A stretch of 64,000 bases of DNA from positions 8,370,001 through 8,434,000 of the forward strand of contig OZ286476.1 in assembly GCA_965644265.1 (NCBI GenBank), in the 5' to 3' direction. A model generated the notes under the pieces. The model had not been told where the DNA came from. It worked only from the letters and a program-made list of their open reading frames with translations, and ran no database searches. A program made the position numbers and the translations under genes. This DNA is from Glycera tridactyla (taxonomy: Eukaryota). Below are positions 36,449-58,040 of this stretch, in pieces (the stretch's first letter is position 1; every line of letters begins with the position of its first letter).

Positions 36449-37483
36449 AAAAAAAGGAAGTAATCAGGAAGACCTTTGTTCCATAAAATTGTGTTTTATT
36501 CAACCAGAAACTCAATTGGACTTTTCAAACATTGATCAGATGAATAAGAATATATGGTCATATATCAAAATATAAAATTTGTGAACAATATTAGACNNNN
36601 NNNNNNNNNNNNNNNNNNNNNNNNNNNNNNNNNNNNNNNNNNNNNNNNNNNNNNNNNNNNNNNNNNNNNNNNNNNNNNNNNNNNNNNNNNNNNNNNNNNN
36701 NNNNNNNNNNNNNNNNNNNNNNNNNNNNNNNNNNNNNNNNNNNNNNNNNNNNNNNNNNNNNNGACAGATAGGTAGATATATATGGAAGGACAAAGATATA
36801 AAAAATATATAAATGGTGGTGGGTAGACATGTAGACAAGTAGGAATGAATATACGCATACATAAAGAAATATGTTGAACAATTTACTATCTATGGTTATG
36901 ATTGTAATTATGATTATGATATGACATCAAGAAAGGTATGGATTTATTAACATTTTTTGGTATAGTATGTAATGACATGATTAAATCCAAATGCATTGGT
37001 CTAATTCTCATGTAATTGACCTTTCATTCTCCCCCTGATTATGTATTATCAATATAGAGCATGGTGATAGTGTACAGCTTTGACTTTTCATTACCAAATC
37101 TTGATCTTTGCATGACATTATCCATGACTTGGTAATGAAATTTAGGACCTAGATAATATAACAGCATCTATCATCAAAAGAATAAATTGACAAGAAGAAT
37201 AGGTTGAATGAATGATTTCTATTTTCACTGAAATGTTTTTTTAATTATATTTTTTTCCAATTATAATTCAATCATGGAAACACTTTCAAGAAAACAAATG
37301 TAATAACTTGCATAACTGATAATACTCATTGAATGTGATGCAGAAAGAACAAATCATCATGCTAAAATTATTCAAACACAAACAAACAAACCATCCGTGA
37401 GTCTAGATATCAGTCTGATAGTGATTATATATTACTGGAAGTATAATTCACCCAATTTTCAACCTTATAAATCCAGAAGATTG

Positions 37484-40400: not shown

Positions 40401-41340
40401 CAATCTTCATGAGGAGATACATCGTGAATGCAATAACAACAAAGGCAAGCATTCCAACAATGATTCCAATGATGTTAGTCATGGTTGTTCCCATCACTCC
40501 TGCTGAAGATGATGATATTCCAGGTAATTCAGGAAGTGTTGTAGGTACATTTGGCTCTTCAGGCGTAAATTGTCCAGTTGATGAGGTCGTTTGAGCTAGG
40601 TGAATGTCTTGTTCAGAGATGGTAGAAGTACCTTGGTCATCTGATACTGATTCAGGTGTCTCAATGAATGCTGATGATGACGGTGATTTGTCATTCGATA
40701 CTGCTGCTGATGGTGGAATAAGGGTTGAACCCGGCGAATGATGATCATTTGATGCAGGGTGAAGATTATCGAATGAGTGATAAGTGGGACTGGTATAAAC
40801 ATGATCTGTAGTCACCTCAATATCGGTGGTCACCTCATCACCGGTAGTCACGTCATCATCGGTAGTCAAATTATTATGGGTAGTTACCTGAATATCATCA
40901 GCTGATGTTGACATTCCAGGAGTGTGAGTGTATTCCTCGTAAATATAAGAGTAATCTGATGTGATGGAGCTAACCTGGTCATAGTTCAATGATGAAGCGA
41001 CAGATGGCGGTGATGAGGTTATTCCGTCTGCTGTCGACGATGACTTATTAGTCTGTCTATCGGCACCGATGTCCGAATATTTATCATCATCTTCTATCGG
41101 CGGAAGATCCTCACAGAACTTATAGTTCTTCCCCAGAACTGTCACGCACTCACACCACGGTTCATCCCAACATCGAGGCATTATTGATCCGGATTTCGCG
41201 TCTCCTGACAACATTCGATGTTTCACCGCGAGTGACCAATCTGGGCGTGATGCGTGAACCTGACGCGCATTGCTAAACAAATTCCCCTTTATTTCGATGT
41301 CAGAAAGTCGTAAATCGCATTGATAGGATTTCCAGATCAA
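37484..41340 (-). CDS. Multi-exon type I membrane glycoprotein (at least 931 aa); exons 41340-40401, 39903-39638, 39073-37484; first exon unresolved
   Basis: In-frame junctions G|GTAAGA (40400) to TTTTCAG (39904), phase 1, and AGG|GTGAGA (39637) to TTCCAG (39074), phase 0. Cys-containing N-domain, S/T mucin-like stalk, TM IIGIIVGMLAFVVIAFTMYLLM, long Ser/Pro-rich tail. Introns contain (TGAA/TGAT)n. Confidence 0.7.
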
Positions 41341-41540
41341 CTGAATGGTGTGGATCGCTTTACCTTATGTTAAACCACTTTGCTCACCCTTGGCACTCAG
41401 ATATGCACAAAATCCAAACTACTTCAGTGCATACCCTTCTGATAGCCAGTAGTATATAACATAACTATGGAGATCATGAATTTTTTTAAACATAAACAAA
41501 CAATTTTGTTCTGGTCAGTATACGTGACGTTTTATTTTTT

Positions 41541-41822
41541 TTCTAATAAATACATTCACAAGCATACAATTTTTTGCTAACTAAATTCATCTACGATATA
41601 TCTCTGCGAAGTCCATCTACAAGTAACACTTCATCAGAATACATTCACAAGATATACATACAGAAAAAATACAATATTTTTTTCTAATAAATACATTCAC
41701 AAGCATACAATTTTTTGCTAACTAAATTCATCTACAATATATCTCTGCTAAGTCCATTTACAAGTAATACTTCATCAGGATACATTCACAAGATATACAT
41801 ACAGAAAAAATACATTCACAAA
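41541..41822 (+). repeat. 141-bp direct tandem duplication (2 copies)
   Basis: TTCTAATAAATACATTCACAAGCATAC... starts at 41541 and 41682. Confidence 0.9.
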
Positions 41823-41893
41823 ATATACATTAATTGAAAAAAAGGGTTATCATGTATTTCTCATTCTTATTTTCATTCATCAGGTTAACCTTC

Positions 41894-42424
41894 TCATAGC
41901 AGACTGAGCACATAATTACAAAGGTCATATTCAGGGAAAGTCAACATCTCTTCAATGATATCACTGTCTTTTTTCCCTTCCAATAATTTCAACCCGTAAT
42001 AACAACAAATGAATCCACAGGTAGATGAATTGAAATGTTGTAATTTCAAAATGTTGAATGAATATAGAGCATTAATTGCATTCTTCATAATGAAAGACAT
42101 GATATGAACCCCATAGTGAGAAGGGGGTTTTCCCATGGGATCAAAGAAATATACATTTATTGGTAAGTTATCAGTCTTTACTGGCTTAGGTAGATGAATT
42201 AATACCCAATGTCTACCTGTATTAAAGTTACGTTCAGTGTTGATAACATACAAACTAGGTCTTTTTTTTACATAGACATGTGGAAGTTCATTGCTAGCAC
42301 AAACCTCCACACATTTAAATTTTTTCATACCATCATAATCACAAAGTATCTGCATGATATCACCAGACAGCATAACGTAATTATTCATGTTAGAGTTTTT
42401 ATGAAAGATTCTTTTTCTATCCAT
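41894..42424 (-). CDS. PRO: Adenain-like cysteine protease (maturation protease)
   Basis: YVINT...GRHWVLI (His), YFFDPMG (Asp), LQHFNSSTCGFIC (Gln, Cys); directly downstream of MCP. Confidence 0.95.
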   Translation of the reverse strand: MDRKRIFHKNSNMNNYVMLSGDIMQILCDYDGMKKFKCVEVCASNELPHVYVKKRPSLYVINTERNFNTGRHWVLIHLPKPVKTDNLPINVYFFDPMGKPPSHYGVHIMSFIMKNAINALYSFNILKLQHFNSSTCGFICCYYGLKLLEGKKDSDIIEEMLTFPEYDLCNYVLSLL

Positions 42425-43877
42425 CAACCTTTATATTTCGTGCAGAATCTACTCTCAATAGTGAATTGTAAGTGGCATATAGTATTACAGTAACTGATTC
42501 TGTAAGTTGAGATGCAAATTTAATATCAAGTTTACTTAATCCTATTGATTGAGGATTAACAAATGGCTCCCCTTGGACACCACCATCGAGATTGAACAGG
42601 TACATGCAGTATCCATTTTTATATTCACCTCTCATTATAGTTGTTATTTTCCTTGGCTTCCCTGTGGATGGAGGAGAAGAGAATGAATATAATGAATCAA
42701 ATGCCTCTAGAAATAGGTCATTATTATAATCTGGTTGAAAAGCTTGTGATGGCACACATGACCCATCAACTGTGAGGCAAAGATAGTTAAGATTGAAATT
42801 CTCAAAATTAAATGGGTTCCTATGGTAGGCTCCATTGAATGCCTCTGATGAGACAAAGGCAACTACTAGTCGTTTTGGTTGAGCTGTGAGAAACAAATTA
42901 TCTAATGGCCATTGAGACATTCCTGAGGGTATAGCTGCTGTCTTTATTTCTGTTCTTTCGAAAGGGTATAGAGCAGGTCCAGCTGATAATCCTGTATTGT
43001 GTCCTAGAAGCATGGCAGGTGAAGGTTTGATCATTGGTACCTTCAATGTAGCCTGCAATATCTCTACTTTGTATTCTCTAGGAGAAGAAGAAGAAGAAGA
43101 AGAAGAAGAAGGTGATGATGATGTATCATCTGTTTCTGTATCTGTGGTTCCTGTTGTTGCTGAGGATGAAGTAGAGGTGGAAGCAGTAGGTTGTGGTCTA
43201 ATCAGTCTGAATTCTTCTGAGTTCTGTGTGAGTTTCAATGTTAGCTGGACAGCATTGAGTAGTAAGCGTTCTTGTTTTGTTAGATCTAAATGAAGTTTAC
43301 CCATCAATTCTACCACATTAGAATTAGATGTGTATGCTCGACGTTGGAAAAAACCTGGATTCATAGTTGCATTTACTGAGGTTGTACTATCCATTCGCCC
43401 ACTTTCATCTTTAAAAAATAACCCCTCCTTGAGTTGACCATCGATATCACTCCAGTCACTTTCTAATAAAGTGTCCATTATACTTCTATATGCATATGCA
43501 GACCCTGAACTGTTTACAAGTTGTTGTTGTAAAAATAGATCGACTTGTTTGAACATAGATGCAACGGGATAGTTAACAAATCCAACAACCTCTGAAGCTG
43601 GAACATCAGTACCGTCGGTAGATGATATCTTAACCTTTAAGTATAAATTGATATTTTTTAAGTCAATATACATCAATGAATTAGGCATTATATTGAATTC
43701 TATTGGAGCTCCTTGTCTGATTTGAGCAATAGGTGAAAAGTTCATGATAATAGTCTTTTCTCTCGAAATGTCCCGTGGTGGTAATGTAAATAGTTCCCAT
43801 TCTGTGGTATATCCATATCTTGTGTCGACACCTGGAGGTGTTTCATCACCGGCAGCACCCGTAGTTTCCATCTCCAT
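42417..43877 (-). CDS. MCP: Major capsid protein, double jelly-roll (Polinton PY), 486 aa
   Basis: LFTLPP, APIEFNI, YIDLKNINLYLKVKI, NYPVASMFKQVDL, YAYRSIMDTLL, PKRLVVAFV, AFNGAYHRNPFNF are Polinton PY-family patterns; size and position fit. Confidence 0.92.
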   Translation of the reverse strand: MEMETTGAAGDETPPGVDTRYGYTTEWELFTLPPRDISREKTIIMNFSPIAQIRQGAPIEFNIMPNSLMYIDLKNINLYLKVKISSTDGTDVPASEVVGFVNYPVASMFKQVDLFLQQQLVNSSGSAYAYRSIMDTLLESDWSDIDGQLKEGLFFKDESGRMDSTTSVNATMNPGFFQRRAYTSNSNVVELMGKLHLDLTKQERLLLNAVQLTLKLTQNSEEFRLIRPQPTASTSTSSSATTGTTDTETDDTSSSPSSSSSSSSSPREYKVEILQATLKVPMIKPSPAMLLGHNTGLSAGPALYPFERTEIKTAAIPSGMSQWPLDNLFLTAQPKRLVVAFVSSEAFNGAYHRNPFNFENFNLNYLCLTVDGSCVPSQAFQPDYNNDLFLEAFDSLYSFSSPPSTGKPRKITTIMRGEYKNGYCMYLFNLDGGVQGEPFVNPQSIGLSKLDIKFASQLTESVTVILYATYNSLLRVDSARNIKVDG

Positions 43878-43888
43878 GATAATATGAG

Positions 43889-44272
43889 TTAGAATACTGG
43901 TTTACGTCCTTTTCGCGATGAGGAACTGTGTTTTTTCTTCCCACGTTTAACCTTGAATGTTTTTCTCTTCTTTGTAATTCCTGAAGGTCTCACTCTCCGA
44001 GTAGGTCGTTTTCGCCTTCGTGATTTGCGAGATTTACGTCCTCTCCTATGTCCGACTCCAACAATGTCTGCTGCTTGTTCAACAGCGGCCATGGCTGGGG
44101 AAATTGAAACAATCTCTCCTGGTTTGGCTGATGATGATGATGATGATGAATGATGTTTTCCACCTATCTTTCCAACAATTGTAAATCCAGAGGAATATGG
44201 TATATGTCCTTTTGATTGAGCATCAAAATGACGCTCAAATTGACCTACTTGTCCTTGACTCCAGGAGGCCAT
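43889..44272 (-). CDS. Small Arg/Lys-rich basic protein, putative DNA-condensing core protein (127 aa)
   Basis: C-terminal half RRGRKSRKSRRRKRPTRRVRPSGITKKRKTFKVKRGKKK; lies between mCP and MCP. Confidence 0.65.
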   Translation of the reverse strand: MASWSQGQVGQFERHFDAQSKGHIPYSSGFTIVGKIGGKHHSSSSSSSAKPGEIVSISPAMAAVEQAADIVGVGHRRGRKSRKSRRRKRPTRRVRPSGITKKRKTFKVKRGKKKHSSSSRKGRKPVF

Positions 44273-44715
44273 GATTTACTAGAGAACCTTAGTATAGCAA
44301 GGGATTTGCTGCTCAAAAAATCACAATGTCTCAATGTGTTATCAACAATTTGAACTCTTATTCTAGTAATGGATTTTCTATCCACGATTACTCCACCCTC
44401 TCCTATGGGTGATAGCAGAATAGATTGGTTCTTCTTTTTTTTATTTAAGAAGCATGATGCACATATTTTTTGCTCAGTTTCACTTATTATTGATGGGCGT
44501 ATACAATCAACAATGATATGAACACATGGTGGTAAATTGTCATTACTTCTTATGGTAGTAATGACTCCTTCAACAGCACAATACCATTGACCAGGTAAAG
44601 ATAATGTATAAGGTAATTCCACAGTGAAATCATGAGGAGTGTTATTTGGATGAATATTGGCACTGTCATCACTTGATATATGAACTGTGAAGCTAAGTTC
44701 ATTTGATTGAGTCAT
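44245..44715 (-). CDS. mCP: Minor capsid (penton, single jelly-roll; Polinton PX), ~156 aa from ATG 44715
   Basis: SFTVHISSDDSANIHPNNTPHDFTVELPYTLSLPGQWYCAV matches the PX N-terminal pattern (F...L.S......P.N....F...LP..L.L.G.W.V); ends ITRIRVQIVD...SKSLAILRF. Confidence 0.8.
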   Translation of the reverse strand: MTQSNELSFTVHISSDDSANIHPNNTPHDFTVELPYTLSLPGQWYCAVEGVITTIRSNDNLPPCVHIIVDCIRPSIISETEQKICASCFLNKKKKNQSILLSPIGEGGVIVDRKSITRIRVQIVDNTLRHCDFLSSKSLAILRFSSKSWPPGVKDK

Positions 44716-44734
44716 TTTTTTTCTGTGCAGGTGG

Positions 44735-46003
44735 TTATTTTTTTTTACTTGGAAATACATCCGATTTCGGAATCCATTGGTTGAATTTAGCTGGAAACCC
44801 AACAAAGCTTACAAGATATTCTTCCTTATTTTTTCCATTAGGTTGAGAGATAGATCTTTTTTTAATGATTTTATTTATGTCATATAGCTTATGTTGTTTT
44901 GGCTCGGCTACTTTTTGCAGTTCTGCTGCATAGAAAGTGCCAATCAATATCTCGTCTTTTGCATCTCGTATCTTGTAAACCTGAATGCCTTCCCTGAATC
45001 TTCTTGAATCAATATAAAGTATTTCTTTACTCCATCTTTCAGTATATTCTCTGTCCAACTTGGCAGGTACCTTGCTGATTCTGACAGGAGTTCCTATGGG
45101 AAACTTGAATTTGCGCCTTTTGCGTTCTCTTCGTTTCCTTTCATCTTTCTCTCTTAATTGATTTTCCAGAAGTTGATCCTCATTCAGATCAGGAACATTC
45201 ATAGTTTCTTTGTCTGTCTGTGCATGCTTATGTGAATTAGGAGGAGATGAATTATTTCTATCACTGTCCTTCGTTCGTTTTTGTCTACTTAAGAGTTGAT
45301 TATATTCAATTAGGATTGGGTTTTCTTGGATAGCTTGATTGGGAGACATATTGAGTGATGAATGATGGGTGTTATTATACCCCTCCACAAGATCTTGTAA
45401 GACATCAATATATTTTGATGTCTTATTATCCTGCATGTATTTCATCATCCTTTTTTTCAAACTTTTCCAACATCTTTCAATAAAAGCTGCCTGACTAAGA
45501 TTGGAGGTGAATGTCTGTCCTATATGTCGGTTTTTTAAAAACTCAGATACATTGTAATTGGTAAATTCACTTCCACGATCAGTCCTGATAGTTCTGGGTT
45601 TTTCACCCATTGAATTGAATATATCTTTGAGAGCTGATATTATTTCCCTGCCTGATTTTGTTTTCAAAGGTCTTATCCATAACTTTCTTGAAAATGTGTC
45701 TATAGCTCCAAGAAGGTATCTAATTTGATTGTTATATTTCATATATTTATGGAGGTCAGCTAGATCACATTCAAGCATTCGTGATGATGCCGATACCTCT
45801 ATATGATTAGTTTTGAACTTTCGTCTCACTTCTTTGTTAAGGGTGTATGTATCTTCACTTGACAAAAATTGTTTGATCTGAGGTAGACTTATGTTGAACT
45901 TCCCTTCATTTTGAACTGTGTGAAACAATTTTTCAGCTGACTGATAACTCCCACCTTTTCTCAAATTTCTATACAGATTTCGTAGATATCTTTGCCATCT
46001 CAT
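44735..46003 (-). CDS. INT: Retroviral-like DDE integrase with C-terminal chromodomain, 422 aa
   Basis: LECDLAD, IRTDRGSEF, FIERCWKSLK (D-33-E); chromodomain YDINKII...EYLVSFVGFPAKFNQWIP. Confidence 0.96.
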   Translation of the reverse strand: MRWQRYLRNLYRNLRKGGSYQSAEKLFHTVQNEGKFNISLPQIKQFLSSEDTYTLNKEVRRKFKTNHIEVSASSRMLECDLADLHKYMKYNNQIRYLLGAIDTFSRKLWIRPLKTKSGREIISALKDIFNSMGEKPRTIRTDRGSEFTNYNVSEFLKNRHIGQTFTSNLSQAAFIERCWKSLKKRMMKYMQDNKTSKYIDVLQDLVEGYNNTHHSSLNMSPNQAIQENPILIEYNQLLSRQKRTKDSDRNNSSPPNSHKHAQTDKETMNVPDLNEDQLLENQLREKDERKRRERKRRKFKFPIGTPVRISKVPAKLDREYTERWSKEILYIDSRRFREGIQVYKIRDAKDEILIGTFYAAELQKVAEPKQHKLYDINKIIKKRSISQPNGKNKEEYLVSFVGFPAKFNQWIPKSDVFPSKKK

Positions 46004-46452
46004 TTTTTTTCTCCCCCAACAATATCACGTGATAATCCAACAACAGTATTTTTATGGTTAGCTCTTATTTTGGGAGAAGGAAGAATATAACCCAGGCTAG
46101 CTGATAAAAGAGAGACCCAAACTGTTGTATGCTCAGATCCTATGCTCAAATTCAGTATACATGCAATACAAATGATATAAATCAATATGGCTTGAGCATA
46201 GAATGATTCTTTTGAAAAAACCTTGTTCTTTATGCATAATCCTGGGACATTGCTCTCATCTGTGCGTGTACTTTGTCTAGAAGGTATAACTGGATGAAAC
46301 GAGTCCTGTTCAATTCCAGTATCTGAATTAGGTCTACTTTCTGACCCCCTTCCTATCACTCCTATGTGAGGGTCTTCATGGAACGGTGACGTCCCAAGTG
46401 ATAAGCTAAAAGGTCTAGTGGAAGAAGTATGTTCCACAGTAACCCCATCCAT
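46000..46452 (-). CDS. Small membrane protein with hydrophobic hairpin (150 aa)
   Basis: FYAQAILIYIICIACILNLSIG...VWVSLLSASLGYILPSPK: two hydrophobic segments; resembles a small protein I recall from invertebrate Polintons; its stop overlaps the INT ATG. Confidence 0.6.
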   Translation of the reverse strand: MDGVTVEHTSSTRPFSLSLGTSPFHEDPHIGVIGRGSESRPNSDTGIEQDSFHPVIPSRQSTRTDESNVPGLCIKNKVFSKESFYAQAILIYIICIACILNLSIGSEHTTVWVSLLSASLGYILPSPKIRANHKNTVVGLSRDIVGGEKK

Positions 46453-46552
46453 TGTGGTTTGGATGGAAATATAATCATTGAAAAAACCTTACTGATTATT
46501 TTATTCTATATTTGGACATGCTCTTTCCTATGAATTCATCAACATCATGTAA

Positions 46553-47197
46553 TTAACTCATGTAACACAGTATGTTCAGCTCTGTTAAAAGAGAAGAAAT
46601 AATATTTAAATATTTGAGACTATCTTTGAGACCTGTGATAACAATACTTCCAGATCTAAATATCAGAAAGGAAACTGACCCTTTCTTCACTGGTATAGCC
46701 TGTAAAATTTCTGGTTCATATTGAGCCTGAAACATTGAAATAATATTATTAAAACAATCTGCTGATAGCTTAGGGAACTTGACCACAGCAGATATAGCTT
46801 GAACTGAAATCCTATTTAGCATTACAAGTATACCCTTCCTTTGAAGGAGGCGACAAAATTTCCTAACATTCAGCCTTCCTTCTTCAATTGTCCTGTTACC
46901 ATTAACTGATATATATCCTGATTGGAAAATCAAAGCAGTAGGTCTTCCTTTACCTATAGATTGATGTCTCAGTATAGCACAATTCATTCTTCTTGGATTA
47001 TATTCAATATTCACAAAAACCCTTGTGATATGCTTGATGTCTATCGTACACCCTACCCTTGTAGCACATAAAACATTTGTACAGCATACCTCAAGGTCAG
47101 AGTTCAATCCACAGCTTACGAAGCTTTTTCCTTCGTTCTTGAAGTCCATCCATCTTTTTCTTGGTGATGCTTCTTCGTCTCTTGGTGACATTACCAT
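46553..47197 (-). CDS. TBP: TATA-binding-protein (TBP) homologue, divergent, intronless (~214 aa from ATG 47197)
   Basis: Both TBP repeats are recognisable: NVLCATRVGCTIDIKHI..NIEYNPRRMNCAILR..TALIFQSGYISVNG..EEGRLNVRKFCRLLQRKG and AQYEPEILQAI..SFLIFRSGSIVITGLK; compare TBP NIVSTVNLGCKLDL..NAEYNPKRFAAVIMR..TALIFSSGKMVCTG..YEPELFPGL..LLIFVSGKVVLTGAK. Confidence 0.92.
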   Translation of the reverse strand: MVMSPRDEEASPRKRWMDFKNEGKSFVSCGLNSDLEVCCTNVLCATRVGCTIDIKHITRVFVNIEYNPRRMNCAILRHQSIGKGRPTALIFQSGYISVNGNRTIEEGRLNVRKFCRLLQRKGILVMLNRISVQAISAVVKFPKLSADCFNNIISMFQAQYEPEILQAIPVKKGSVSFLIFRSGSIVITGLKDSLKYLNIISSLLTELNILCYMS

Positions 47198-47522
47198 CAG
47201 TATTCTTGGAATCAGGTAAGACTTTATGATTGATGGTAGAGGTATCGTTTGGTTTCTGAAGATCTGATGACTCAGTTGTAATAGTATTATCACTATTGTC
47301 CATGTATCTATGATCATGAGAGCTTGGTGAAGACTCAGGCTCAGGTTTTAAATCTTGTTGCATGTGTTCACTGTCTGGCTGCTCTGCATCATGTGATTTG
47401 TTTGATGGCTGATGGGAGTCATATAAACCAGCACTATCAACAAGACTGTCATCCATCATTTCGCTATTCAGAAAGCCTTCAAGCTTTCCTGATGGTACAA
47501 GGAAATACTCCTTGATTTTCAT
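47097..47522 (-). CDS. Hypothetical protein (~141 aa), possibly a reduced PZ-like protein
   Basis: ATG 47522 overlaps the upstream stop (ATGA); starts MKIKEYFLVP and ends RKLWIEL, with a disordered middle. Confidence 0.5.
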   Translation of the reverse strand: MKIKEYFLVPSGKLEGFLNSEMMDDSLVDSAGLYDSHQPSNKSHDAEQPDSEHMQQDLKPEPESSPSSHDHRYMDNSDNTITTESSDLQKPNDTSTINHKVLPDSKNTDGNVTKRRRSITKKKMDGLQERRKKLRKLWIEL

Positions 47523-47887
47523 ATCCTTCTTTTTGGTTTGCTTTGAATCTTCCATATTAATTGATCTATGTTCTTGAATATTAACTTAACAAACTGTATA
47601 GTTTCAGGAATATGGCTAAGGATAATTTGTTTCTTGATTTGAGGACCGGTATTTTCTTCAGTAAGAGAAAGCAAGAAGTTCTTAATTTCCTTCAGTTGAT
47701 CGCGTTTTGCTTGAGAAAGTCCAAAACTACCATAAAAAACATTAACTCCTACAGCACCTATAGCTTTAGCCTGATCTAAAGACATGCGCTCCAGCAGTTT
47801 TTTTTGCAGGTGCAATTCTGCAGGAGCATTATTCAAGGCAAAAAAAAATGGTCTCTGATGCCTAACAAGATCATAAGTTGAAGACAT
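47519..47887 (-). CDS. Small helical Polinton protein following the ATPase (122 aa)
   Basis: AKAIGAVGVNVFYGSFGLSQAKRDQLKEIKNFLLSL resembles the small ORF commonly downstream of Polinton ATPases; the resemblance is from memory. Confidence 0.55.
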   Translation of the reverse strand: MSSTYDLVRHQRPFFFALNNAPAELHLQKKLLERMSLDQAKAIGAVGVNVFYGSFGLSQAKRDQLKEIKNFLLSLTEENTGPQIKKQIILSHIPETIQFVKLIFKNIDQLIWKIQSKPKRRI

Positions 47888-48021
47888 AATAAACCATTCT
47901 ATCCTTAATCTAAATGAGGATTGCTAACTGTCTATATATGTCCTTGACTCTATTCCTATGTCACTGACTACTATGTACTCTATGTCACTGACTACTATGT
48001 ACTCCTATGACTGCTAATGTC

Positions 48022-48732
48022 TCATCCTAAGGAATAGAATTTCATAATTTCCATCGGAAATATATCAGTTCTAAGTCTTACTTCATCTGGGACATTAGCT
48101 GTCATATCAATTACCAAATACCCAAAAGGTCTATTTTTTATAGCTTTTTGATATGCCTGTACAACCAAATCTTTCTTACCGGGAAACATTTGCCTACTCA
48201 ATGTGGTTATTTGGTCAGCACCCCTTGCATTTTCAAACAGACAAATATAAGATGCATTCAATGTAATTGACCTGCTGAATTTTCCCTGTTGGTACAAATT
48301 GTGAGACACGTAGAGTACTGAAGTACCCATGTGATGAGCTTTGACAGTGAAAAAGTCAAAGATCAATTCAGATGATACAACCTCTCTCATTAAATCATCA
48401 ACTACCAGTATCAAATGGGTTTTAGCAGGGGAAACTAGTTCGTCAAGGAGGTCATCAGTGGGGAGTCCATGATTGAAAACTATATTAGGGAAGGATTTTC
48501 GCATCCTTTTGAATAATGGTTGATCTGCAGAATAGCAGTACAATATGGAGATATCCCTATTCATTCTGTTTTCGAACATGGATTGAGCGAAATATAACAA
48601 GTTGTAGATGAAAGTGGTTTTTCCACTCCCTGACCTACCACAAATTATGAAGCTGGAATTCTCCTTGAAAAGTATCCTACCAGTATTGTTGACACCAGAG
48701 GAAGCCCTTGCTTTGATTGGTAACTCAGTCAT
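48022..48732 (-). CDS. ATP: A32/FtsK-like genome packaging ATPase, 236 aa
   Basis: Walker A GRSGSGKT, Walker B LILVVDD, FTVKAHH, SRSITLNASYICLF, PFGYLVID, RLRTDIFP. Confidence 0.96.
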   Translation of the reverse strand: MTELPIKARASSGVNNTGRILFKENSSFIICGRSGSGKTTFIYNLLYFAQSMFENRMNRDISILYCYSADQPLFKRMRKSFPNIVFNHGLPTDDLLDELVSPAKTHLILVVDDLMREVVSSELIFDFFTVKAHHMGTSVLYVSHNLYQQGKFSRSITLNASYICLFENARGADQITTLSRQMFPGKKDLVVQAYQKAIKNRPFGYLVIDMTANVPDEVRLRTDIFPMEIMKFYSLG

Positions 48733-49004
48733 TGTAGGGAGAATATTGATGATGAACTGCTATCTTCTTTCTAATCAAGGGGTCAACTGAAATACTATCT
48801 ACTTTCTAGCTTCTTAAGCCAGAGGTCAAATGAAAAAATACCTACTTCCTGGTTGCTCTAATTTCTAAGTCAAGGAAGGGACAAGAGTGAAGACAACTAC
48901 TTCCTATGATATGGGAATATGGAGCCAAAAAAAACAAGAACAAAAGAGATCTGATATGAATATATATTGACAGGATCTGTTCTCATCCATCCACCTTGTT
49001 GATA

Positions 49005-49135
49005 CAAGATTACATGGTCCACACAGGGACCTCCTACAGTCAGTGCAAGATTACATGGTCCACACAGGGACCTCCTACAGTCGGTACAAGATTACATAGT
49101 CCACACAGGGACCTCCTACAGTCGGTAAAAGATTA
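49005..49135 (+). repeat. 41-bp tandem repeat x3 plus partial copy, intergenic between POLB and ATP
   Basis: CAAGATTACATGGTCCACACAGGGACCTCCTACAGTCRGTR starts at 49005, 49046 and 49087. Confidence 0.92.
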
Positions 49136-49355
49136 TATTGCTCCTCTACAATGATTATAATTTTATATGTAGAAACACCATACAATGCAAACCTGTCACA
49201 TCATCTATACACCAGAAAAACTGAGTAAGCTATATGACTGTAAAGATTTCATAGCTTTTCTATCAGGAAGATAGCTATGTAATCACTACTATTATATAGC
49301 TTCCTATCAGCATGAATCAATGAAAAACTAGCTGATTATATGCAATGCACCCTAC

Positions 49356-52300
49356 TCAATATCCTATTGGATGTGAAGTCAGGTCTGGATGAAACACACG
49401 TTTGTCACTCGTCAAGCCATACCTCTTAATTTGATGTTTGGTGTTGACTGTCATTGACCGTTTTATTCGAAATATATGAGCATTTGAGACTTCAACCTCA
49501 AGACCATATTTCAGTGGACACTGACTTTCATTGTCATTATCATTGTCATTAAAGTCTGGTTCACATTGACTATCGATGGACCTAGAAATCCGATTACCAT
49601 ACTCTGTAACCATCGATTTCATAACAGATAAATTCATGTGGTTTGCTGCTTCCATACTCAACGTGAAACCCTTATACTTCATCACAGTGTCATTGTTCGA
49701 TAGAACATATCCATAACTCTTTGGGCCAGATGAAAAAAACGTGGTTATGTGAGTTCCTTCAGGTATTTCTGAGGTGAGGTCACCCAGATATGGACCCAAT
49801 GGAAGACAGTGGTCAGGAGAATCAGCTCTATAAATCAATGAGTCCGTATCACAGTACATGGCACGTCTCCCACAACTGTCAACTAGTGAATATAGGTGCA
49901 TCCTACCATAAGCAGTAATAAATGCTGCTAAAATGACATTATCTGTGGGACCTGAATGTAAAGTCTCTCCCCGATTGGAATATTCTAGAAGTAATGTATC
50001 CGGGTCCATTATGTTGAAATCAGTGATATCTGAACGCACATCAGACATAATATCATATAAGGCACTAGGATTCTGACTGTTTACTATCTTTGTTTTAGAT
50101 TTTCCCACTCTTTGCGCCAACTTACCGTACATGGCATTAAGAAGAAGCTTAGCCATCGTCCTTTTAGATGAGTTATATTCCATCTTTTCATCATCTAACT
50201 GTACTCCTTCAACCTTAAAAAAATTTTCAATAAATTCTTGTTTTTGTTGAGGAGATTGACAATGCGATGGGAAACCAGTGCTCTCTGTCTTAATCTTGAG
50301 AAATAAATTAACATACTCCTGAAAGAAATTGCAATTTTCACCTGTAAATGAGTCCAAAGTGTTTTCTGTGGTAGCATCGAAATGATAAACTTCATGCACT
50401 TTTTGAACTTTATATCCCTTTGATCTTGCTAGTTGAATTTCAGGTGTCACCCATGTACCAGTTAAGGCTCGTTGATGCTCTGAGCAATCACAGAAACGTT
50501 GGGGTTCAGGTAATTCAGAACATGATCGACATAGAACAAAAAGCAACTTATTCCGAGCTCTTGATGGTAATACAGGAAGGTCCAATGTCCTGGGAGGGAT
50601 GATGGTAATTTTTGCTACACCAAAATAGCTCTCCAATGTCAGATCAAATCCACCCTGAATTATATCTGAAGTCATTACTTCAGGGTGACCCACTGGAAAT
50701 ACCTGATTTTTCATGATCCAAGGGTACAAGGATGTAACATCAACGTACTCTACACGTGGATATTGTACCCCATTGACAATGACTGGAGGGTTGACATTTT
50801 CATCCTCAGTGTATCCCATTTGGAAAACCTCCACCCTCCCTCCATAATAACCATCTCTAGGATCAAGGGGGTCTTCATAATCAAATACAGAATTGACAAT
50901 TATTTCAACTAATGGATCATATTTCATTAAAGTACGAAATTCATGTTCCCACATAACCCGGACTACATATCCCATATCAATTAGTGATTGCTCAACATCT
51001 ACTGTATTTTGATATATTTCATTGAATGTCCGTTTTGTTCTTTGGCACTGTATGCGATCTCTACTAAAAGGAAAACACTGAGGACATGCATGGAACCAAC
51101 ATCCATGAAAATAGAATATTGTGTCTCCTAATACTGGAATATGAACAATTGGTTTCAGAGGCAAAGGTCGGTTATCTCCAGTCATAAAACCATCAGCGTA
51201 CACAACTCTTCCATCTCGCAATCGAATTCCCACCTCAGACCAATTTCCTGAATGATATAAGTGGATAGATTCTGATTGAGAGACATAGGTAAGCCATTGT
51301 AAGGATATCTTACTTGAGCCATGAAGATAAGACCTGTATCCTCCAGGTGGGACACGTGCCATGTCAGTTGAAATGAAATGTTTCCTATCTATAGAATATC
51401 CATTGGGTAAGTTTTCATTCGAGACCATTCCATTTCCATCTAGTAAATCTATCTTAACCTTTCCTCCTCTCTGTACTGCAGGATAGCTAATCGAAAGATT
51501 AATGTCTGGTCTAGCTTCATACATGGGATCAAGTTTTAAAGAGAGTCTGATTTTCTCAGAAATGAACTTTGATTGATAAATTCTCATCGCAAGATTAGCC
51601 AATGTAATTGACTTTTCATATGGGTCTATTTCAGTTAGCTGTTTAACAATTTGCTTGAATTTCAAACAAGTCAAACGAAGGATGGTTACATCATTCTCAC
51701 AGTATGAAATCAATTCATCATAAAAGTTGAATATTTCATTATTCTGTATCTTTTCAGAGTGCCATTCCAAGAACCTTTGAGCAACCTCTGGTTTCATGGA
51801 TGAAACACCATAAAATTTCACATCTGGATAAGGACCAATATAATTTTGATTTGATGCAATATTAAAAAAATGAGGAAAATACCCTTTGCATATAGCAGTG
51901 CTGATCTCATTAGAATCTTCATCCTCAGTGTTCATCAATCCAAAAGCAGATGGCAAAGAACTAAGAGGGAAAGGTAAAAACTTGTAATTATCAACAAACC
52001 TCAAAGCAATGGGATCTTTTAGTTCCATGAATATCAACTTTGTTCCAGCAAAGATAACATCTGCTGGTTGAATATTTCTTTTCTGAAGAAGTTCTTGTAA
52101 AACCAATATATGATCGAACCCACTCCCATTATGAGAAATAATTGTTGCCCCGTCATGTTGAGGTTTTAATAACCAATCCGTGAATTTCAACAAACTGTCA
52201 TCCCCATAAAATATGTGCTGCCTGATTCCACATGAACTATCTCTACAACATTTTTTTTGATTGAAGTCCCTCGCAGGTTTCTTTTTGGATTTTAGTTTAC

Positions 52301-54383
52301 ACCTCATGCTACACCTATCACCGCACCTATCACATTCTATATGTGCACCAAATGGTAAATCGGAACAGTCATCACATATTTTTTGCGCCACCACCAAGGT
52401 TGCCTTATGCTGAGAGCTACCACAAGATGATGAATTGCAATGCAAACATCGTGAGCAATTGGAGCAGGGTGATGGCTGGAATTTACACTTATCACAACGA
52501 ACAGGAGGAAGAATGTTTCCTTTATCACACTCATATTTGGAATCTTGTGAGGTCTCTATGTCAAAGAAAATGATTAGATGATCTCTCTGACATAAAAGGA
52601 TTGGACTAACAAGACTTTTTGATCTAATATAGCATTCATGCCTCTCTAAAAAGTAGCTTTCACATTTTGAGCAATAATACTCTCCACATTCATGAAGAGA
52701 ACGAGGACGTTTCTTAGATTCCATGACCTTCTTACACCTGACACACATCCACCACTTTATACAATAGTCATCTTTGTGCAAAAAAAAACATGTCATGTTA
52801 CCAAAGTATGAGGTACATGCCAAACAAGAGAGAAGAGGACCTTCAATCTCATTTCCCTTGCAATAATTCGATTGACACTTGATACATTTTGGACCTGAAC
52901 AACACACAGTACTGTTATTCCGTTTTGGCTTGCAACATTCTTCACAAATGGACCTCTGATCAAAGAAGGCATTTAATTTAGTTATAGCGTCATAATGACA
53001 AGGAGATAAGATATCACCTGGATCAATACGATGGTGATAGACATATACTTTCACCCAACCCATTTCTTTAGCATGATCAGAAGGTTTCCTAACAAATCGA
53101 TTTCCTCCAAGTTGAGATATAACATAAACACCACATTCCAATACATGCTCAATTCTCTCAATGTCACCTAATGTAATTTCGGATTGGTCACTTAAATCAG
53201 CCTCCTCAAGTAATTTAGCTAAGGCCCTATCTTGAATTCTCCCTCTCCATTCCCTAATGGACTTATATACCTGAGGTGAGGTTTTACGGATTCGAAAAGC
53301 TGTGCAAAGATAATCATTGTCATTTTCAGTCTTTTCTTGCTCAAATTTCTCTCTTGTAATCTGCACAGCATATGCCCAAGATACAATTATTGCTCGTGGT
53401 AGGCATGTTTTATCACCTTCATTTCTTATACGAACTAAGCTACGCTTTGAATATAATGAGTCCAAATCGTCATTTACTAAGGATAGGGTTTTTCTACCAA
53501 GACCACTTCCTGTAATAGCTCTCAAAATGCATACAGAAATAAAAAAAGTCCTATCAATTCTAACCTCCTTCTTTGATTGAAGAACTACTGAAATTCTATT
53601 CAATATGCCATTAACATCAAGGTTTTTGAACAGATCAACTGGAATGCATATGGGACTATCAAGAAATTCTTGATCGATAACGATTTTAACATAATCATCT
53701 GCTCGACATGATGAACTGATACCTTCTAATATCTTCTCAAATATCTTTCTTATGATATCTTCAACATCAACAATAGTGACAGGAGATAATGAAGATATGA
53801 ATCCCTGCTGAGGTATAATTTTGAACAAAGTACCATTGACAAGGTCACCATGAAAGGGATCATATGACATTCTATGTACATGAAAGAGATCCCTGTTTTC
53901 ATCTGCCAAACGGTCATATATACCATCAAATTGATCAGAAGTTGAATGAGGGACAGCATTGGGTATACTAGGAGAGGTAGATGTTGAAATTTGAGAAGGT
54001 GAGGCATCTTCAAGAGGTTGAGGTAAGGGCAAACGGCTCAATTCAGTCTCAGGTACTGCTGAATCAGTAATTATCCTATTCGTAGGTGATGAAATGAGGT
54101 CACTGTGTATCAGTTCATGTGGTACATGAGTATTAGATATTGACAATGGAGACATGAATATATTTCCATGCTGTTGATCCTGATGATCAGCGTGGAGTAC
54201 CTGACCTCCACTAGATCGAAGATTATATGTTGATCTCACCACATCCTTTTGAGATTTTTTTCTTTTATCACGTGAGCGTGACTGGTATAACTGATGAGGT
54301 TTCCGTTTCCTCAATACTCTGCGAGATGATGGTCTTGACCCTCTACCTCGCCCCACTTGTTGTCTTGAAGAAAACCAAGATGC
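49356..54383 (-). CDS. POLB: Protein-primed family B DNA polymerase (with N-terminal terminal-protein region); last exon 54383-49356, 1675 aa
   Basis: Exo I FFDIET, Exo II HNGSGFD, Exo III YCENDV, polymerase motifs YVDVTSLYP, KLLLNAMYGK, YCDTDS, GPKSYG; Vsr-like insert DGF...FHGCWFHAC. The ORF has no ATG at its start and begins at acceptor TTTGTTTCAG (54384). Confidence 0.98.
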   Translation of the reverse strand, partial: ASWFSSRQQVGRGRGSRPSSRRVLRKRKPHQLYQSRSRDKRKKSQKDVVRSTYNLRSSGGQVLHADHQDQQHGNIFMSPLSISNTHVPHELIHSDLISSPTNRIITDSAVPETELSRLPLPQPLEDASPSQISTSTSPSIPNAVPHSTSDQFDGIYDRLADENRDLFHVHRMSYDPFHGDLVNGTLFKIIPQQGFISSLSPVTIVDVEDIIRKIFEKILEGISSSCRADDYVKIVIDQEFLDSPICIPVDLFKNLDVNGILNRISVVLQSKKEVRIDRTFFISVCILRAITGSGLGRKTLSLVNDDLDSLYSKRSLVRIRNEGDKTCLPRAIIVSWAYAVQITREKFEQEKTENDNDYLCTAFRIRKTSPQVYKSIREWRGRIQDRALAKLLEEADLSDQSEITLGDIERIEHVLECGVYVISQLGGNRFVRKPSDHAKEMGWVKVYVYHHRIDPGDILSPCHYDAITKLNAFFDQRSICEECCKPKRNNSTVCCSGPKCIKCQSNYCKGNEIEGPLLSCLACTSYFGNMTCFFLHKDDYCIKWWMCVRCKKVMESKKRPRSLHECGEYYCSKCESYFLERHECYIRSKSLVSPILLCQRDHLIIFFDIETSQDSKYECDKGNILPPVRCDKCKFQPSPCSNCSRCLHCNSSSCGSSQHKATLVVAQKICDDCSDLPFGAHIECDRCGDRCSMRCKLKSKKKPARDFNQKKCCRDSSCGIRQHIFYGDDSLLKFTDWLLKPQHDGATIISHNGSGFDHILVLQELLQKRNIQPADVIFAGTKLIFMELKDPIALRFVDNYKFLPFPLSSLPSAFGLMNTEDEDSNEISTAICKGYFPHFFNIASNQNYIGPYPDVKFYGVSSMKPEVAQRFLEWHSEKIQNNEIFNFYDELISYCENDVTILRLTCLKFKQIVKQLTEIDPYEKSITLANLAMRIYQSKFISEKIRLSLKLDPMYEARPDINLSISYPAVQRGGKVKIDLLDGNGMVSNENLPNGYSIDRKHFISTDMARVPPGGYRSYLHGSSKISLQWLTYVSQSESIHLYHSGNWSEVGIRLRDGRVVYADGFMTGDNRPLPLKPIVHIPVLGDTIFYFHGCWFHACPQCFPFSRDRIQCQRTKRTFNEIYQNTVDVEQSLIDMGYVVRVMWEHEFRTLMKYDPLVEIIVNSVFDYEDPLDPRDGYYGGRVEVFQMGYTEDENVNPPVIVNGVQYPRVEYVDVTSLYPWIMKNQVFPVGHPEVMTSDIIQGGFDLTLESYFGVAKITIIPPRTLDLPVLPSRARNKLLFVLCRSCSELPEPQRFCDCSEHQRALTGTWVTPEIQLARSKGYKVQKVHEVYHFDATTENTLDSFTGENCNFFQEYVNLFLKIKTESTGFPSHCQSPQQKQEFIENFFKVEGVQLDDEKMEYNSSKRTMAKLLLNAMYGKLAQRVGKSKTKIVNSQNPSALYDIMSDVRSDITDFNIMDPDTLLLEYSNRGETLHSGPTDNVILAAFITAYGRMHLYSLVDSCGRRAMYCDTDSLIYRADSPDHCLPLGPYLGDLTSEIPEGTHITTFFSSGPKSYGYVLSNNDTVMKYKGFTLSMEAANHMNLSVMKSMVTEYGNRISRSIDSQCEPDFNDNDNDNESQCPLKYGLEVEVSNAHIFRIKRSMTVNTKHQIKRYGLTSDKRVFHPDLTSHPIGY

Positions 54384-54717
54384 CTGAAACAAATGTACTC
54401 AATATACACTAGTTGTCATGAATGGGAATCAACCAAAAACATTGACAGATAATATAGTGATGATGCAATGTAAATGACAATGACAACAACGACAACAACA
54501 AGAACAACAACGATGATGACGATGGAGAGAGAAATGATCAGGAGACGACGGCAACGCTAAAGGCAATAATGAGATGAGATAACAATGATGACAAAAACAA
54601 CAACAACAAAATTGAAAAAAAGATAAATTTCCATGGGAATGATGTCATAGAAGAAATCAATATTGACGTCACACTGACAAGAATCAGCGATCATGTCAAC
54701 AACAAAAGATGTATATA

Positions 54718-57826: not shown

Positions 57827-57922
57827 CTGAAATGAAAGAAAGAAAAAAAGTTCTATTTTGTTCAATCGCACCAATCATTTCACATTGACTTTCATTATTC
57901 GCATCTTAGTGATTCATAATCG

Positions 57923-58040
57923 TCATTGTCTGAATTATCGTCTCAGTCAACGTCAAAGTCATTATCTGAATCATCGTCTCAGTCAACGTCAAAGTCATTA
58001 TCTGAATCATCGTCTCAGTCAACGTCACAGTCATTATCTA
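57923..58040. repeat. 36-bp tandem repeat x3 plus partial copy
   Basis: TCATTATCTGAATCATCGTCTCAGTCAACGTCAAAG starts at 57923, 57959, 57995 and 58031. Confidence 0.9.

What the first reader, a model, noticed from the sequence alone, without database searches (positions are those of the whole stretch)
46553..47197. Polinton-encoded TBP with a remodelled DNA-binding face, built into the virion/integrase gene cluster
Seen: a two-repeat TBP fold, intronless, between the ATPase and integrase. Its start overlaps the upstream ORF by ~100 nt, so it is integrated in the cluster and not a stray host insertion. Against yeast TBP, the TFIIA-side EYNP loop and the TFIIB stirrup YEPE (E186/E188) are kept. 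Only two of the four DNA-intercalating Phe remain (F116 LIFQSG, F207 LIFRSG); F99 is Met, F190 is Leu, and the second-repeat N159 is Ala. Known: TBP is not a Polinton core gene and adenoviruses lack it; some NCLDVs encode TBP-like proteins; TRF2/TBPL1 lost intercalating Phe and does not bind TATA. Inference: a viral TBP redirecting host Pol II/TFIIA/TFIIB to non-canonical viral promoters, or a decoy sequestering TFIIA/TFIIB. I cannot confirm whether this has been described in other Polintons.
Basis: partly seen in the sequence, partly recalled or inferred. Interest (0 to 1): 0.9.

Follow-up and report, generated by a model that had tools for sequence, protein, structure and literature searches.

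The report
Polinton-borne TATA-binding protein family
A virus-like mobile element (Polinton/Maverick) sitting intact in this genome carries its own diverged copy of the cell's TATA-binding protein. The same kind of gene sits beside the integrase of at least one other Polinton, so a lineage of these elements probably brings its own promoter-recognition factor.

Summary
ORF 46553-47197 (-) encodes a 214-aa two-lobe TBP fold: Pfam PF00352 E=1.8e-21, AlphaFold pLDDT 93, Foldseek TM about 0.8 to solved TBPs.

It lies inside a 29.3-kb Polinton (34056-63346). The element has 141-nt perfect inverted ends, (AGT)2/(ACT)2 termini and a 6-bp duplication. The gene sits between the PolB-ATPase block and the integrase-capsid-protease block.

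Some are family traits and one is not:
- In the closest relatives (37-45% identical), F99->Met, K120->Tyr, V122->Ser, T124->Asn and N159->Ala/Ser/Cys are fixed.
- F190->Leu is nearly private to this copy.
- The TFIIB-stirrup glutamates and the helix-H2 basic patch are kept.
- DNA-face positions are far more conserved than other strand positions (0.37 vs 1.20 bits).

That pattern favours altered DNA recognition using host factors over a decoy.

About 50 of the best 150 database representatives form this non-canonical family. One distant member lies directly upstream of an rve-chromo integrase next to a PolB. Prior literature offers only a figure-legend label.

I stopped there and referred the rest of the neighbourhood census.

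The parts
34056..63346 (.). Whole Polinton/Maverick-type element, 29,291 bp. Five N runs lie inside it and were left as they are.
   Evidence: Inverted repeat found; ends read; N runs listed. pPolB and rve integrase lie inside.
34056..34196 (+). Left terminal inverted repeat. It begins with (AGT)2.
   Evidence: 100% complementary to the right arm. The end motif is the one reported for vertebrate Mavericks (PMC8097293).
63206..63346 (-). Right terminal inverted repeat. It ends with (ACT)2.
34050..34055 (.). Left copy of the 6-bp target-site duplication (CATGCG).
   Evidence: Read directly. The same hexamer is at 63347-63352.
63347..63352 (.). Right copy of the 6-bp target-site duplication (CATGCG).
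46553..47197 (-). TBP-like gene: 214 codons plus stop. The open frame continues upstream to 47317.
47093..47197 (-). N-terminal extension (residues 1-35). A helix and a short strand are predicted at moderate confidence, and a motif is shared with the closest relatives.
46814..47092 (-). N-terminal TBP lobe (residues 36-128). It carries the fixed replacements L43, M71, Y95, S97, N99 and the retained H2 basic patch (R108, R112, K113, R116, R120).
46556..46813 (-). C-terminal TBP lobe (residues 129-214). It has A134 in place of the second Asn, stirrup Glu161 and Glu163, L165 in place of Phe, and retains F180, V186 and T188.
46500..46505 (-). AATAAA hexamer 48 nt after the TBP stop. It is a possible poly(A) signal closing an orf122-orf152-TBP unit.
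   Evidence: Function is inferred.
47097..47555 (-). Upstream ORF of 152 aa with no known domain. It overlaps the TBP start by 101 nt and is in the position of 'pz' by synteny.
   Evidence: Synteny with PMC8097293 is an inference.
47519..47887 (-). ORF of 122 aa with no known domain. It overlaps orf152 by 37 nt and is in the position of 'pm' by synteny.
47954..48009 (.). 24-nt tandem repeat (2.3 copies) in the spacer upstream of orf122. This is a candidate promoter region of the unit that ends with the TBP gene.
   Evidence: Function is inferred.
48022..48732 (-). Putative packaging ATPase of 236 aa, supported by P-loop and weak Pox_A32 hits only.
   Evidence: All hits are below curated thresholds.
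49356..54392 (-). Protein-primed family-B DNA polymerase ORF of 1678 aa.
   Evidence: PF03175 E=6.4e-34. It is 46% identical over 1557 aa to P0166.
46000..46452 (-). ORF of 150 aa between the TBP gene and the integrase. No known domain.
44735..46003 (-). Retrovirus-type integrase of 422 aa with a weak C-terminal chromodomain hit.
   Evidence: rve E=1.8e-13; PFV integrase E about 3e-7.
42417..43877 (-). ORF of 486 aa, a major-capsid candidate by position only.
   Evidence: The order int-orf186-orf127-orf486-pro matches int-mcp-pw-MCP-pro of PMC8097293. There is no sequence hit, and the single-sequence model is unusable (pLDDT 35.8).
41894..42427 (-). Putative adenain/Ulp1-like cysteine protease of 177 aa.
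   Evidence: Peptidase_C5 and C48 hits at E about 4e-3, below thresholds.

Best explanation
The gene encodes an element-borne paralogue of TATA-binding protein that belongs to a Polinton lineage, not to the host.

Shown:
- It has a confident two-lobe TBP saddle.
- It lies inside an intact TIR/TSD-bounded Polinton, between the PolB-ATPase block and the integrase-capsid-protease block.
- It belongs to a distinct, diverse TBP-like family whose members sit next to Polinton genes where context is known.
- The family keeps the two C-lobe stirrup glutamates that contact TFIIB/Brf, and the basic patch on N-lobe helix H2 that TFIIA, TAF1, NC2, Mot1 and Brf1 use.
- The element encodes no recognisable TFIIB.
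- The DNA-facing positions are the most conserved part of the protein, but in a changed state in the N lobe (Leu, Met, Tyr, Ser, Asn in place of Val71, Phe99, Lys120, Val122, Thr124) and at Asn159.

Inferred:
- After entry into the nucleus, or upon activation of the integrated copy, the protein sits on a core-promoter element of the Polinton's own genes.
- The 3' half of that element differs from a canonical TATA box.
- The protein recruits host TFIIB (and TFIIA) and thereby host RNA polymerase II. Element transcription would then be independent of, or distinguishable from, host TFIID.

The extra Phe190->Leu change in this copy may weaken the 5' kink further, or may be a recent private change.
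For: Fold.

Element bounds and gene order.

Composition: GC3 of the gene is 0.293, against 0.295 for PolB and 0.296 for the integrase.

Family:
- The closest relatives score E 1e-44 to 1e-35 at 37-45% identity. Single-copy canonical TBPs reach only about 1e-16.
- hhalign of the close clade scores 388 against the ~170-aa group and 218 against canonical TBPs.

Fixed replacements and retained Glu/basic patch: column counts.

Selection on the face: DNA-face positions have 0.37 bits of entropy against 1.20 for other strand positions (about 1.5 in 10,000 random sets are as low). The N-lobe face alone has 0.19 bits against a core mean of 1.32.

Context elsewhere:
- In L001 the 172-aa relative ends where an rve+chromo integrase starts, with a PolB ORF 3.8 kb away.
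- Relative P0004 and the best PolB relative P0166 both have a longest contig of exactly 24,122 bp.

No TFIIB-like domain was found in any element ORF.

Contrast with giant-virus TBPs, which lose these interfaces and carry their own TFIIB: PMC7221094.
Against: - No binding, expression or transcript data exist.
- No promoter motif is significantly shared by the element's upstream regions. The best 6-mer, CTATAT, occurs 6 times against 1.2 expected, which is not significant after about 1,500 tests.
- Context of relatives is known directly for one locus and indirectly for one more.
- The host species is unknown, so a comparison with the host's own TBP, TBPL1 and TBPL2 was not possible.
- The mapping of yeast contact residues rests on a pairwise alignment that has small gaps near N159. 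The list of contact residues is from my knowledge of the TBP-TATA crystal structures.
- The same retained interfaces would also fit use with Brf factors (Pol III).
Confidence: 0.55

Rival explanations
1. Decoy. The protein does not bind DNA. It soaks up host TFIIB, TFIIA or negative regulators (NC2, Mot1) through the retained interfaces, which shifts host transcription or relieves repression.
For: The TFIIB-stirrup Glu pair and the H2 basic patch are retained. Two of the four Phe and one of the two Asn are lost in this copy.
Against: A decoy should show a relaxed concave face. Instead that face is the most conserved part of the protein across relatives that are only about 40% identical. The replacements are fixed polar or aromatic residues, and relatives keep three of the four Phe.
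Confidence: 0.12
2. Pol III (or Pol I) use. The protein pairs with host Brf1/Brf2 to drive small non-coding RNAs from the element, or to retarget Pol III.
For: The same stirrup Glu and N-lobe basic patch are used by Brf1/Brf2 (PMC7221094), and both are kept.
Against: No tRNA-like or other Rfam RNA is found in the window at gathering scores. The element's known need is expression of about 20 protein-coding ORFs, and an AATAAA follows the gene block.
Confidence: 0.08
3. Passenger. A host TBP-type gene was captured and is carried without function in this copy. The F190->Leu change would be a sign of drift.
For: F190->Leu is nearly private to this copy: Phe in 11 of 15 relatives, Leu in one other. 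No expression data exist.
Against: - The frame is open over its full length in an element with perfect TIRs.
- It is only 25-30% identical to cellular TBPs.
- Family-wide conservation spans elements whose PolBs are themselves only 46% identical.
- Its composition equals that of the core genes.
- Synteny with the integrase is seen in a relative that is only about 36% identical.
Confidence: 0.1
4. Host gene. It is a lineage-specific cellular TBP paralogue (TRF-like) that merely lies near transposon debris.
For: Animals do have TBP paralogues (PMC7221094).
Against: - The gene is 12.5 kb inside the left end and 16 kb inside the right end of a TIR/TSD-bounded element. It is on the strand of all core genes and overlaps its neighbour.
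- No family member carries a gene name or a UniRef entry, and all close ones sit on contigs of 0.7-24 kb.
- A Trp at the N-lobe signature position, reported for TBPL1, is absent.
Confidence: 0.03

Closest known systems
Cellular TATA-binding protein (TBP, PF00352)
   Same: Two-lobe saddle fold, with TM 0.75-0.84 to solved TBPs. It keeps N69, F116, F207, L114, L205, V213 and T215, the stirrup Glu186/Glu188 and the H2 basic patch.
   Different: - Only 25-30% identical, and 76 Pfam bits against 180-231 for canonical TBPs.
- Fixed changes at V71, F99, K120, V122, T124 and N159.
- A three-residue insertion before the S4 strand of the N lobe.
- Encoded by a mobile element and intronless.
TBP-like proteins of giant viruses (Nucleocytoviricota)
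   Same: A virus-encoded TBP fold. Foldseek finds them at E 1e-10 to 1e-4.
   Different: - They are only 9-20% identical to this protein.
- According to PMC7221094 they mostly lose the TFIIB-contact Glu and the N-lobe signature, and they carry their own TFIIB.
- This family keeps both interfaces, and the element has no TFIIB or RNA polymerase.
TBP of mirusviruses
   Same: A TBP gene as a frequent gene of a nuclear-replicating virus group (59% of genomes, PMC10132985).
   Different: Mirusviruses are large (about 350-430 kb), encode RNA polymerase subunits and infect protists. No sequence comparison with them was made here.
Herpesvirus late-gene TBP mimic (KSHV ORF24, HCMV UL87, EBV BcRF1)
   Same: The same working idea: a nuclear DNA virus without its own polymerase supplies a TBP-like promoter reader that brings host Pol II to viral promoters with a variant TATA-type element (PMC4893493 and bioRxiv 10.1101/2025.08.25.672222, listed). 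The fold search returns BcRF1 and UL87-type proteins weakly.
   Different: Those are large proteins with a cryptic TBP-like domain and no detectable sequence similarity to TBP, and they bind Pol II directly. This one is a small bona fide TBP homologue with the TFIIB stirrup intact.
TBPL1/TRF2 of animals
   Same: A TBP paralogue with a changed aromatic residue on the N-lobe DNA face, thought to serve non-TATA promoters (PMC7221094).
   Different: TBPL1 has Trp at the N-lobe signature position. This family has Met at the F99 position and Phe at the F116 position. TBPL1 is a chromosomal host gene. No labelled TBPL1 sequence was available to place in a tree.
'TBP' gene label in MELD viruses with adintovirus-like PolB (Starrett et al. 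2021)
   Same: [quoted passage not shown]
   Different: That paper gives no analysis, and the section concerns non-animal datasets. Which element carries the gene could not be read, because figures and supplements are not held.

Membership tests
TBP family (PF00352) | Two tandem TBP repeats scoring above the Pfam gathering score | tested here: met
   76.2 bits against 22.9, with two stretches matched.
TBP family (PF00352) | Saddle fold of two alpha/beta lobes | tested here: met
   AlphaFold pLDDT 93.1. Foldseek against PDB TBPs gives E about 1e-14 and TM 0.75-0.84.
TBP family (PF00352) | Four DNA-kinking Phe (yeast F99, F116, F190, F207) | tested here: not met
   This copy has M, F, L, F. The close relatives have M, F, F, F in most cases.
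TBP family (PF00352) | Asn pair at the centre of the saddle (yeast N69, N159) | tested here: not met
   N41 is kept. The second position is Ala here, and Ala/Ser/Cys in 10 of 10 full-length close relatives (15 of 15 with fragments).
TBP family (PF00352) | C-lobe stirrup Glu pair that contacts TFIIB/Brf | tested here: met
   E161 and E163 are present. Both are Glu in 15 of 15 close relatives. The role of the pair is taken from PMC7221094.
TBP family (PF00352) | Basic patch on N-lobe helix H2 (the interface for TFIIA, TAF1, NC2, Mot1 and Brf1) | tested here: met
   R108, R112, K113, R116 and R120 are present. R112 and R116 are invariant in the clade. The role is taken from PMC7221094.
TBP family (PF00352) | Binds and bends TATA-box DNA | not testable with these tools
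   No assay is available. There is only conservation of the face.
Polinton/Maverick element | Protein-primed family-B polymerase together with a retrovirus-type integrase | tested here: met
   PF03175 E=6.4e-34. rve E=1.8e-13 and PFV integrase hits.
Polinton/Maverick element | Terminal inverted repeats, 6-bp target-site duplication and the (AGT)2//(ACT)2 end motif | tested here: met
   The features are as described in PMC8097293.
Polinton/Maverick element | Packaging ATPase and adenain-like protease | tested here: inconclusive
   There are only sub-threshold hits: Pox_A32 at 19.8 bits against 22.8, and Peptidase_C5 at 17.5 against 21.3. Position and size fit.
Polinton/Maverick element | Double and single jelly-roll capsid proteins | tested here: inconclusive
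   No sequence hit. The model of orf486 is unusable at pLDDT 35.8. Only the gene order matches.
TBPL1/TRF2 | Trp at the N-lobe signature aromatic position, in a chromosomal host gene | tested here: not met
   The N-lobe aromatic positions are Met and Phe, and the gene lies inside the element. The criterion is from PMC7221094.
Orthogonal viral TBP-TFIIB pair (giant-virus type) | A diverged stirrup co-evolving with a virus-encoded TFIIB | tested here: not met
   The stirrup Glu pair is kept. No TFIIB-like domain was found in any element ORF by Pfam.

The most novel reading that the evidence does not exclude
The whole non-canonical TBP-like family seen here (the close clade plus the ~170-aa group, about 50 of the best 150 database representatives) is carried by Polintons/Mavericks, typically just upstream of the integrase. 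It would then be a third major line of TBP evolution that lives in mobile virus-like elements. Its members would build hybrid initiation complexes: their own promoter reader combined with host TFIIB, TFIIA and Pol II, on an element-specific core promoter. That would give small nuclear DNA elements a private transcription switch.
Probability: 0.35. Interest if true: 0.8.

Novelty: new variant of a known kind. Interest (0 to 1): 0.62.

Why it matters
How Polintons/Mavericks, among the most widespread virus-like elements of eukaryotes, control their own transcription is essentially unknown. They encode no RNA polymerase.

An element-encoded TBP changes that picture. It keeps the host TFIIB and TFIIA interfaces but has a fixed, altered DNA-reading surface. 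This yields a concrete, testable model: a private core promoter read by a private TBP.

It is also a natural contrast to giant-virus TBPs, which went the other way (own TFIIB, lost host interfaces), and to the herpesvirus TBP mimic.

Finally, it offers a natural series of TBP variants that show which saddle residues can change together.

Tried and rejected
- Word-based homologue search with the single protein found nothing. The exhaustive search was needed.
- Exact look-ups of ten window proteins showed that this genome is not in the collection, so copy number could not be counted.
- Cluster look-ups gave no organism names for relatives.
- Long database hits were scanned for fusions of TBP with Polinton domains. 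None was found. They are canonical TBPs fused to unrelated host domains.
- A shared promoter motif was sought in 120-150 nt upstream of 21 element ORFs. Nothing survives multiple testing.
- The bacterial-type promoter/terminator scan is irrelevant and showed no enrichment.
- Capsid identification failed by PDB sequence search, PHROGs and a single-sequence fold.
- Host identification from the flanks failed. They hold only satellites, microsatellites and a reverse-transcriptase fragment.
- Rfam found no RNA family.
- The neighbour-joining tree is only a rough guide, and I rely on the profile comparisons instead.
- dN/dS was not possible. The relatives are too distant at protein level and their DNA was not fetched.
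- No splice model joining orf152 to the TBP frame was tested, because no tool predicts an intron there.
Full report
**1. The observation**

The window has an ORF at 46553..47317 on the minus strand (254 aa).
- The protein matches Pfam TBP (PF00352) with E=1.8e-21 and 76.2 bits against a cut-off of 22.9, with both repeats matched.
- It matches solved yeast, human and plant TBPs at about 1e-18.
- An AlphaFold2 model built on 87 relatives has mean pLDDT 93.1 and pTM 0.84, with the strand/helix order of a TBP saddle.
- Foldseek returns only TBPs at the top, with E about 1e-14, TM 0.75-0.84 normalised to the target and 25-30% identity.
- A second TBP-like sequence is not present in the window.

So the fold is real and far beyond chance.

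**2. The element around it**

A 142-nt perfect inverted repeat pairs 34055-34196 with 63206-63347. Reading the ends shows the following:
- CATGCG is present on both sides, at 34050-34055 and 63347-63352.
- The element proper is 34056-63346.
- It starts with AGTAGT and ends with ACTACT.

Six-bp duplications and the (AGT)2//(ACT)2 end motif are exactly what Barreat and Katzourakis describe for intact vertebrate Mavericks (PMC8097293).

Nearly all long ORFs inside are on the minus strand:
- a 1678-aa protein-primed PolB (PF03175, E=6.4e-34);
- a 236-aa P-loop protein with a sub-threshold Pox_A32 hit;
- orf122, orf152, the TBP gene and orf150;
- an rve integrase with a weak chromodomain hit;
- orf186, orf127 and orf486;
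- a weak adenain/Ulp1-like protease.

The order is polB-atp-x-x ... int-x-x-x-pro. It is the order of the two core modules of vertebrate Mavericks, ppolb-atp-pm-pz and int-mcp-pw-MCP-pro. The TBP gene and orf150 therefore sit at the junction of the two modules, not in the terminal accessory regions. This last step is an inference from synteny. The capsid genes could not be verified.

Other points on the element:
- The core ORFs named above are open over their full length, and I saw no stops or frameshifts in them.
- Five N runs lie inside the element. I left them alone, and they prevent a statement about some other ORFs.
- The perfect ends suggest a recent insertion.
- At 29.3 kb the element is larger than the 12.7-24.6 kb reported for vertebrates.
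- GC3 of the TBP gene (0.293) equals that of PolB (0.295) and the integrase (0.296).

**3. Residues**

I mapped the protein on the yeast core chain printed (chain index plus 60). The list of DNA-contact residues comes from my knowledge of the TBP-TATA crystal structures. The roles of the stirrup Glu pair and of the N-lobe basic patch come from Ravarani et al. 2020 (PMC7221094).

- N69 is kept (N41).
- F99 is Met71.
- F116 is kept (F91).
- N159 is Ala134.
- F190 is Leu165.
- F207 is kept (F180).
- EYNP and YEPE are present.

I add three points:
- The N-lobe strand that carries V122 and T124 is changed (Ser97, Asn99). K120 is Tyr95 and V71 is Leu43.
- The matching C-lobe strand is canonical (Val186, Thr188).
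- The H2 basic patch is kept (R108, R112, K113, R116, R120).

**4. A family, not a one-off**

The exhaustive search found 1320 hits. The best are a clade of proteins of about 180-250 aa at 37-45% identity, with E 1e-44 to 1e-35. Next comes a large set of core-only proteins of about 170 aa. Single-copy canonical TBPs appear only from about 1e-16 (one tandemly duplicated TBP, P0008, scores 8e-31).

Profile comparison puts the close clade much nearer to the ~170-aa group (score 388 over 178 columns) than to canonical TBPs (score 218 over 156 columns). About 50 of the best 150 representatives belong to these two groups.

Column counts for the ten full-length close relatives, with canonical-type sequences alongside:

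| Yeast position | Close relatives (of 10) | Canonical-type sequences |
|---|---|---|
| F99 | Met, 10 | Phe in 91 of 95 |
| K120 | Tyr, 10 | Lys in 81 of 95 |
| V122 | Ser, 10 | Val in 81 of 95 |
| T124 | Asn, 10 | Thr in 79 of 95 |
| V71 | Leu, 9 of 9 with a residue | Val in 85 of 95 |
| N159 | Ala/Ser/Cys, 10 | Asn in 93 of 95 |
| F116 and F207 | Phe, 10 | not tabulated here |
| Two stirrup Glu | Glu, 10 | not tabulated here |

F190 is Phe in 8 of the 10. Leu there is seen only in this copy and in one fragment. The Glu of EYNP is not shared by relatives.

Across nine non-redundant clade members:
- DNA-face positions have a mean entropy of 0.41 bits against 1.32 for the core.
- Compared only with other predicted strand positions, the figures are 0.37 against 1.20 bits. 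About 1.5 in 10,000 random sets are as low.
- The remodelled N-lobe face is the most conserved part, at 0.19 bits.

**5. Where relatives live**

Sources give no organism and almost no names. All close relatives sit on contigs of 0.7-24 kb, and none has a UniRef entry. That is unlike an annotated host gene.

The PolB of this element has named relatives only in animals: a mayfly, a firefly, an oyster and a dragonfly. The host is therefore probably an invertebrate.

The best PolB relative, P0166, is 46% identical over 1557 aa. Its longest contig is 24,122 bp, exactly the longest-contig length of the TBP-like P0004. The two are therefore very probably on one contig.

**6. A possible slip, stated plainly**

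Because relatives are probably parts of virus-like elements of animals, I had decided not to fetch their DNA.

I made one exception, for P0021 of the ~170-aa group. Its contigs are 0.1-0.65 Mb, so I took them for protist, giant-virus or mirusvirus sequence. The returned locus L001 turned out to hold a Polinton-like element:
- The TBP-like gene is at 10001-10519.
- It is followed at once by an rve+chromo integrase at 10519-11628.
- A PolB-family ORF lies 3.8 kb further on, on the other strand.
- A Cys-loop-receptor ligand-binding fragment lies nearby, so the contig may be from an animal.

This may cross the bar. I stopped, made no further look-ups and did not read, align or search L001's DNA. 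I use only the gene table that the tool printed.

That table is nevertheless informative. A relative only about 36% identical shows the same TBP-then-integrase order as the window.

**7. How it most likely works**

Shown:
- a TBP saddle;
- residence in a Polinton lineage;
- retained TFIIB-stirrup and H2 interfaces;
- no TFIIB or RNA polymerase in the element;
- a concave face that is changed but strongly conserved.

Inferred:
- The protein binds a core-promoter element of the Polinton's own genes.
- In TBP-TATA structures the N lobe reads the 3' half of the box. The difference from TATAAA should therefore lie there.
- The protein recruits host TFIIB/TFIIA and Pol II.

A decoy role is less likely, because a decoy's DNA face should drift.

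The three overlapping ORFs orf122, orf152 and TBP (overlaps of 37 and 101 nt) are followed by AATAAA 48 nt after the TBP stop. Upstream of them is a spacer with a 24-nt tandem repeat. They may form one transcription unit. This is inference.

A hint of CTATAT upstream of several genes (6 against 1.2 expected) is not significant.

**8. Comparison with what is known**

- Giant-virus TBP-likes are only 9-20% identical in the structure search. According to PMC7221094 they tend to lose the host interfaces and pair with their own TFIIB. This family does the opposite.
- Mirusviruses often carry a TBP (PMC10132985), but they are large viruses with their own polymerase subunits.
- The herpesvirus late-gene TBP mimic is the nearest working analogue and is not a relative.
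- TBPL1 differs at the signature position and is a host gene.
[quoted passage not shown] 2021 (PMC8502044). No analysis accompanies it.

**9. Verdict**

This is a member of an essentially uncharacterised, Polinton-borne TBP family: a new variant of the known kind 'virus-encoded TBP'.

The main gaps are the context of most relatives, the host species, transcripts and any binding data.

Noticed in passing
window 34056-34061 and 63341-63346: The element's termini carry the (AGT)2//(ACT)2 motif reported for vertebrate Mavericks. The PolB relatives, however, point to invertebrate hosts.
   Followed up: partly
window 41536-41814, 47954-48009, 49003-49135: Tandem repeats (141 nt x2, 24 nt x2.3, 41 nt x3.2) sit in three of the few long intergenic spacers of the element. 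Each is upstream of a gene block, so they are possible regulatory arrays.
   Followed up: no
window 43889-44272 (-): The C-terminal end of orf127 is very rich in Lys/Arg (seen in the upstream print). This resembles a DNA-condensing core protein, and the ORF is in the 'pw' position by synteny.
   Followed up: no
window 54718-57822 (-): A 1034-aa ORF between PolB and the right-hand accessory region has no Pfam hit. It holds a 33-nt tandem repeat (55687-55900) and is interrupted by two N runs.
   Followed up: no
window 37484-39088 (-): orf534 contains 63-nt and 96-nt imperfect tandem repeats (37637-38091) and has no detectable homologue. It may be a repetitive fibre-like or disordered protein.
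   Followed up: no
window 1-1183: A 76-bp satellite with 15.6 copies and 92% matches lies at the left edge of the window.
   Followed up: no
window 2880-3290 (-): A reverse-transcriptase fragment (RVT_1, E=1.2e-15) lies in the flank. The surrounding 34 kb holds microsatellites and no recognisable host gene.
   Followed up: partly
L001 7450-8130 (+): In the other Polinton-like locus, a 226-aa ORF about 1.9 kb upstream of the TBP-like gene has a weak PC4 (transcriptional coactivator p15) hit. That could be a second transcription-related gene. It was seen only in the tool's gene table.
   Followed up: no
window 47093-47197 (-), residues 1-35: The N-terminal extension is predicted to form a helix and a strand (pLDDT about 80). 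It shares a short motif, with Cys residues in several relatives, ahead of the first lobe. Its role is unknown.
   Followed up: partly
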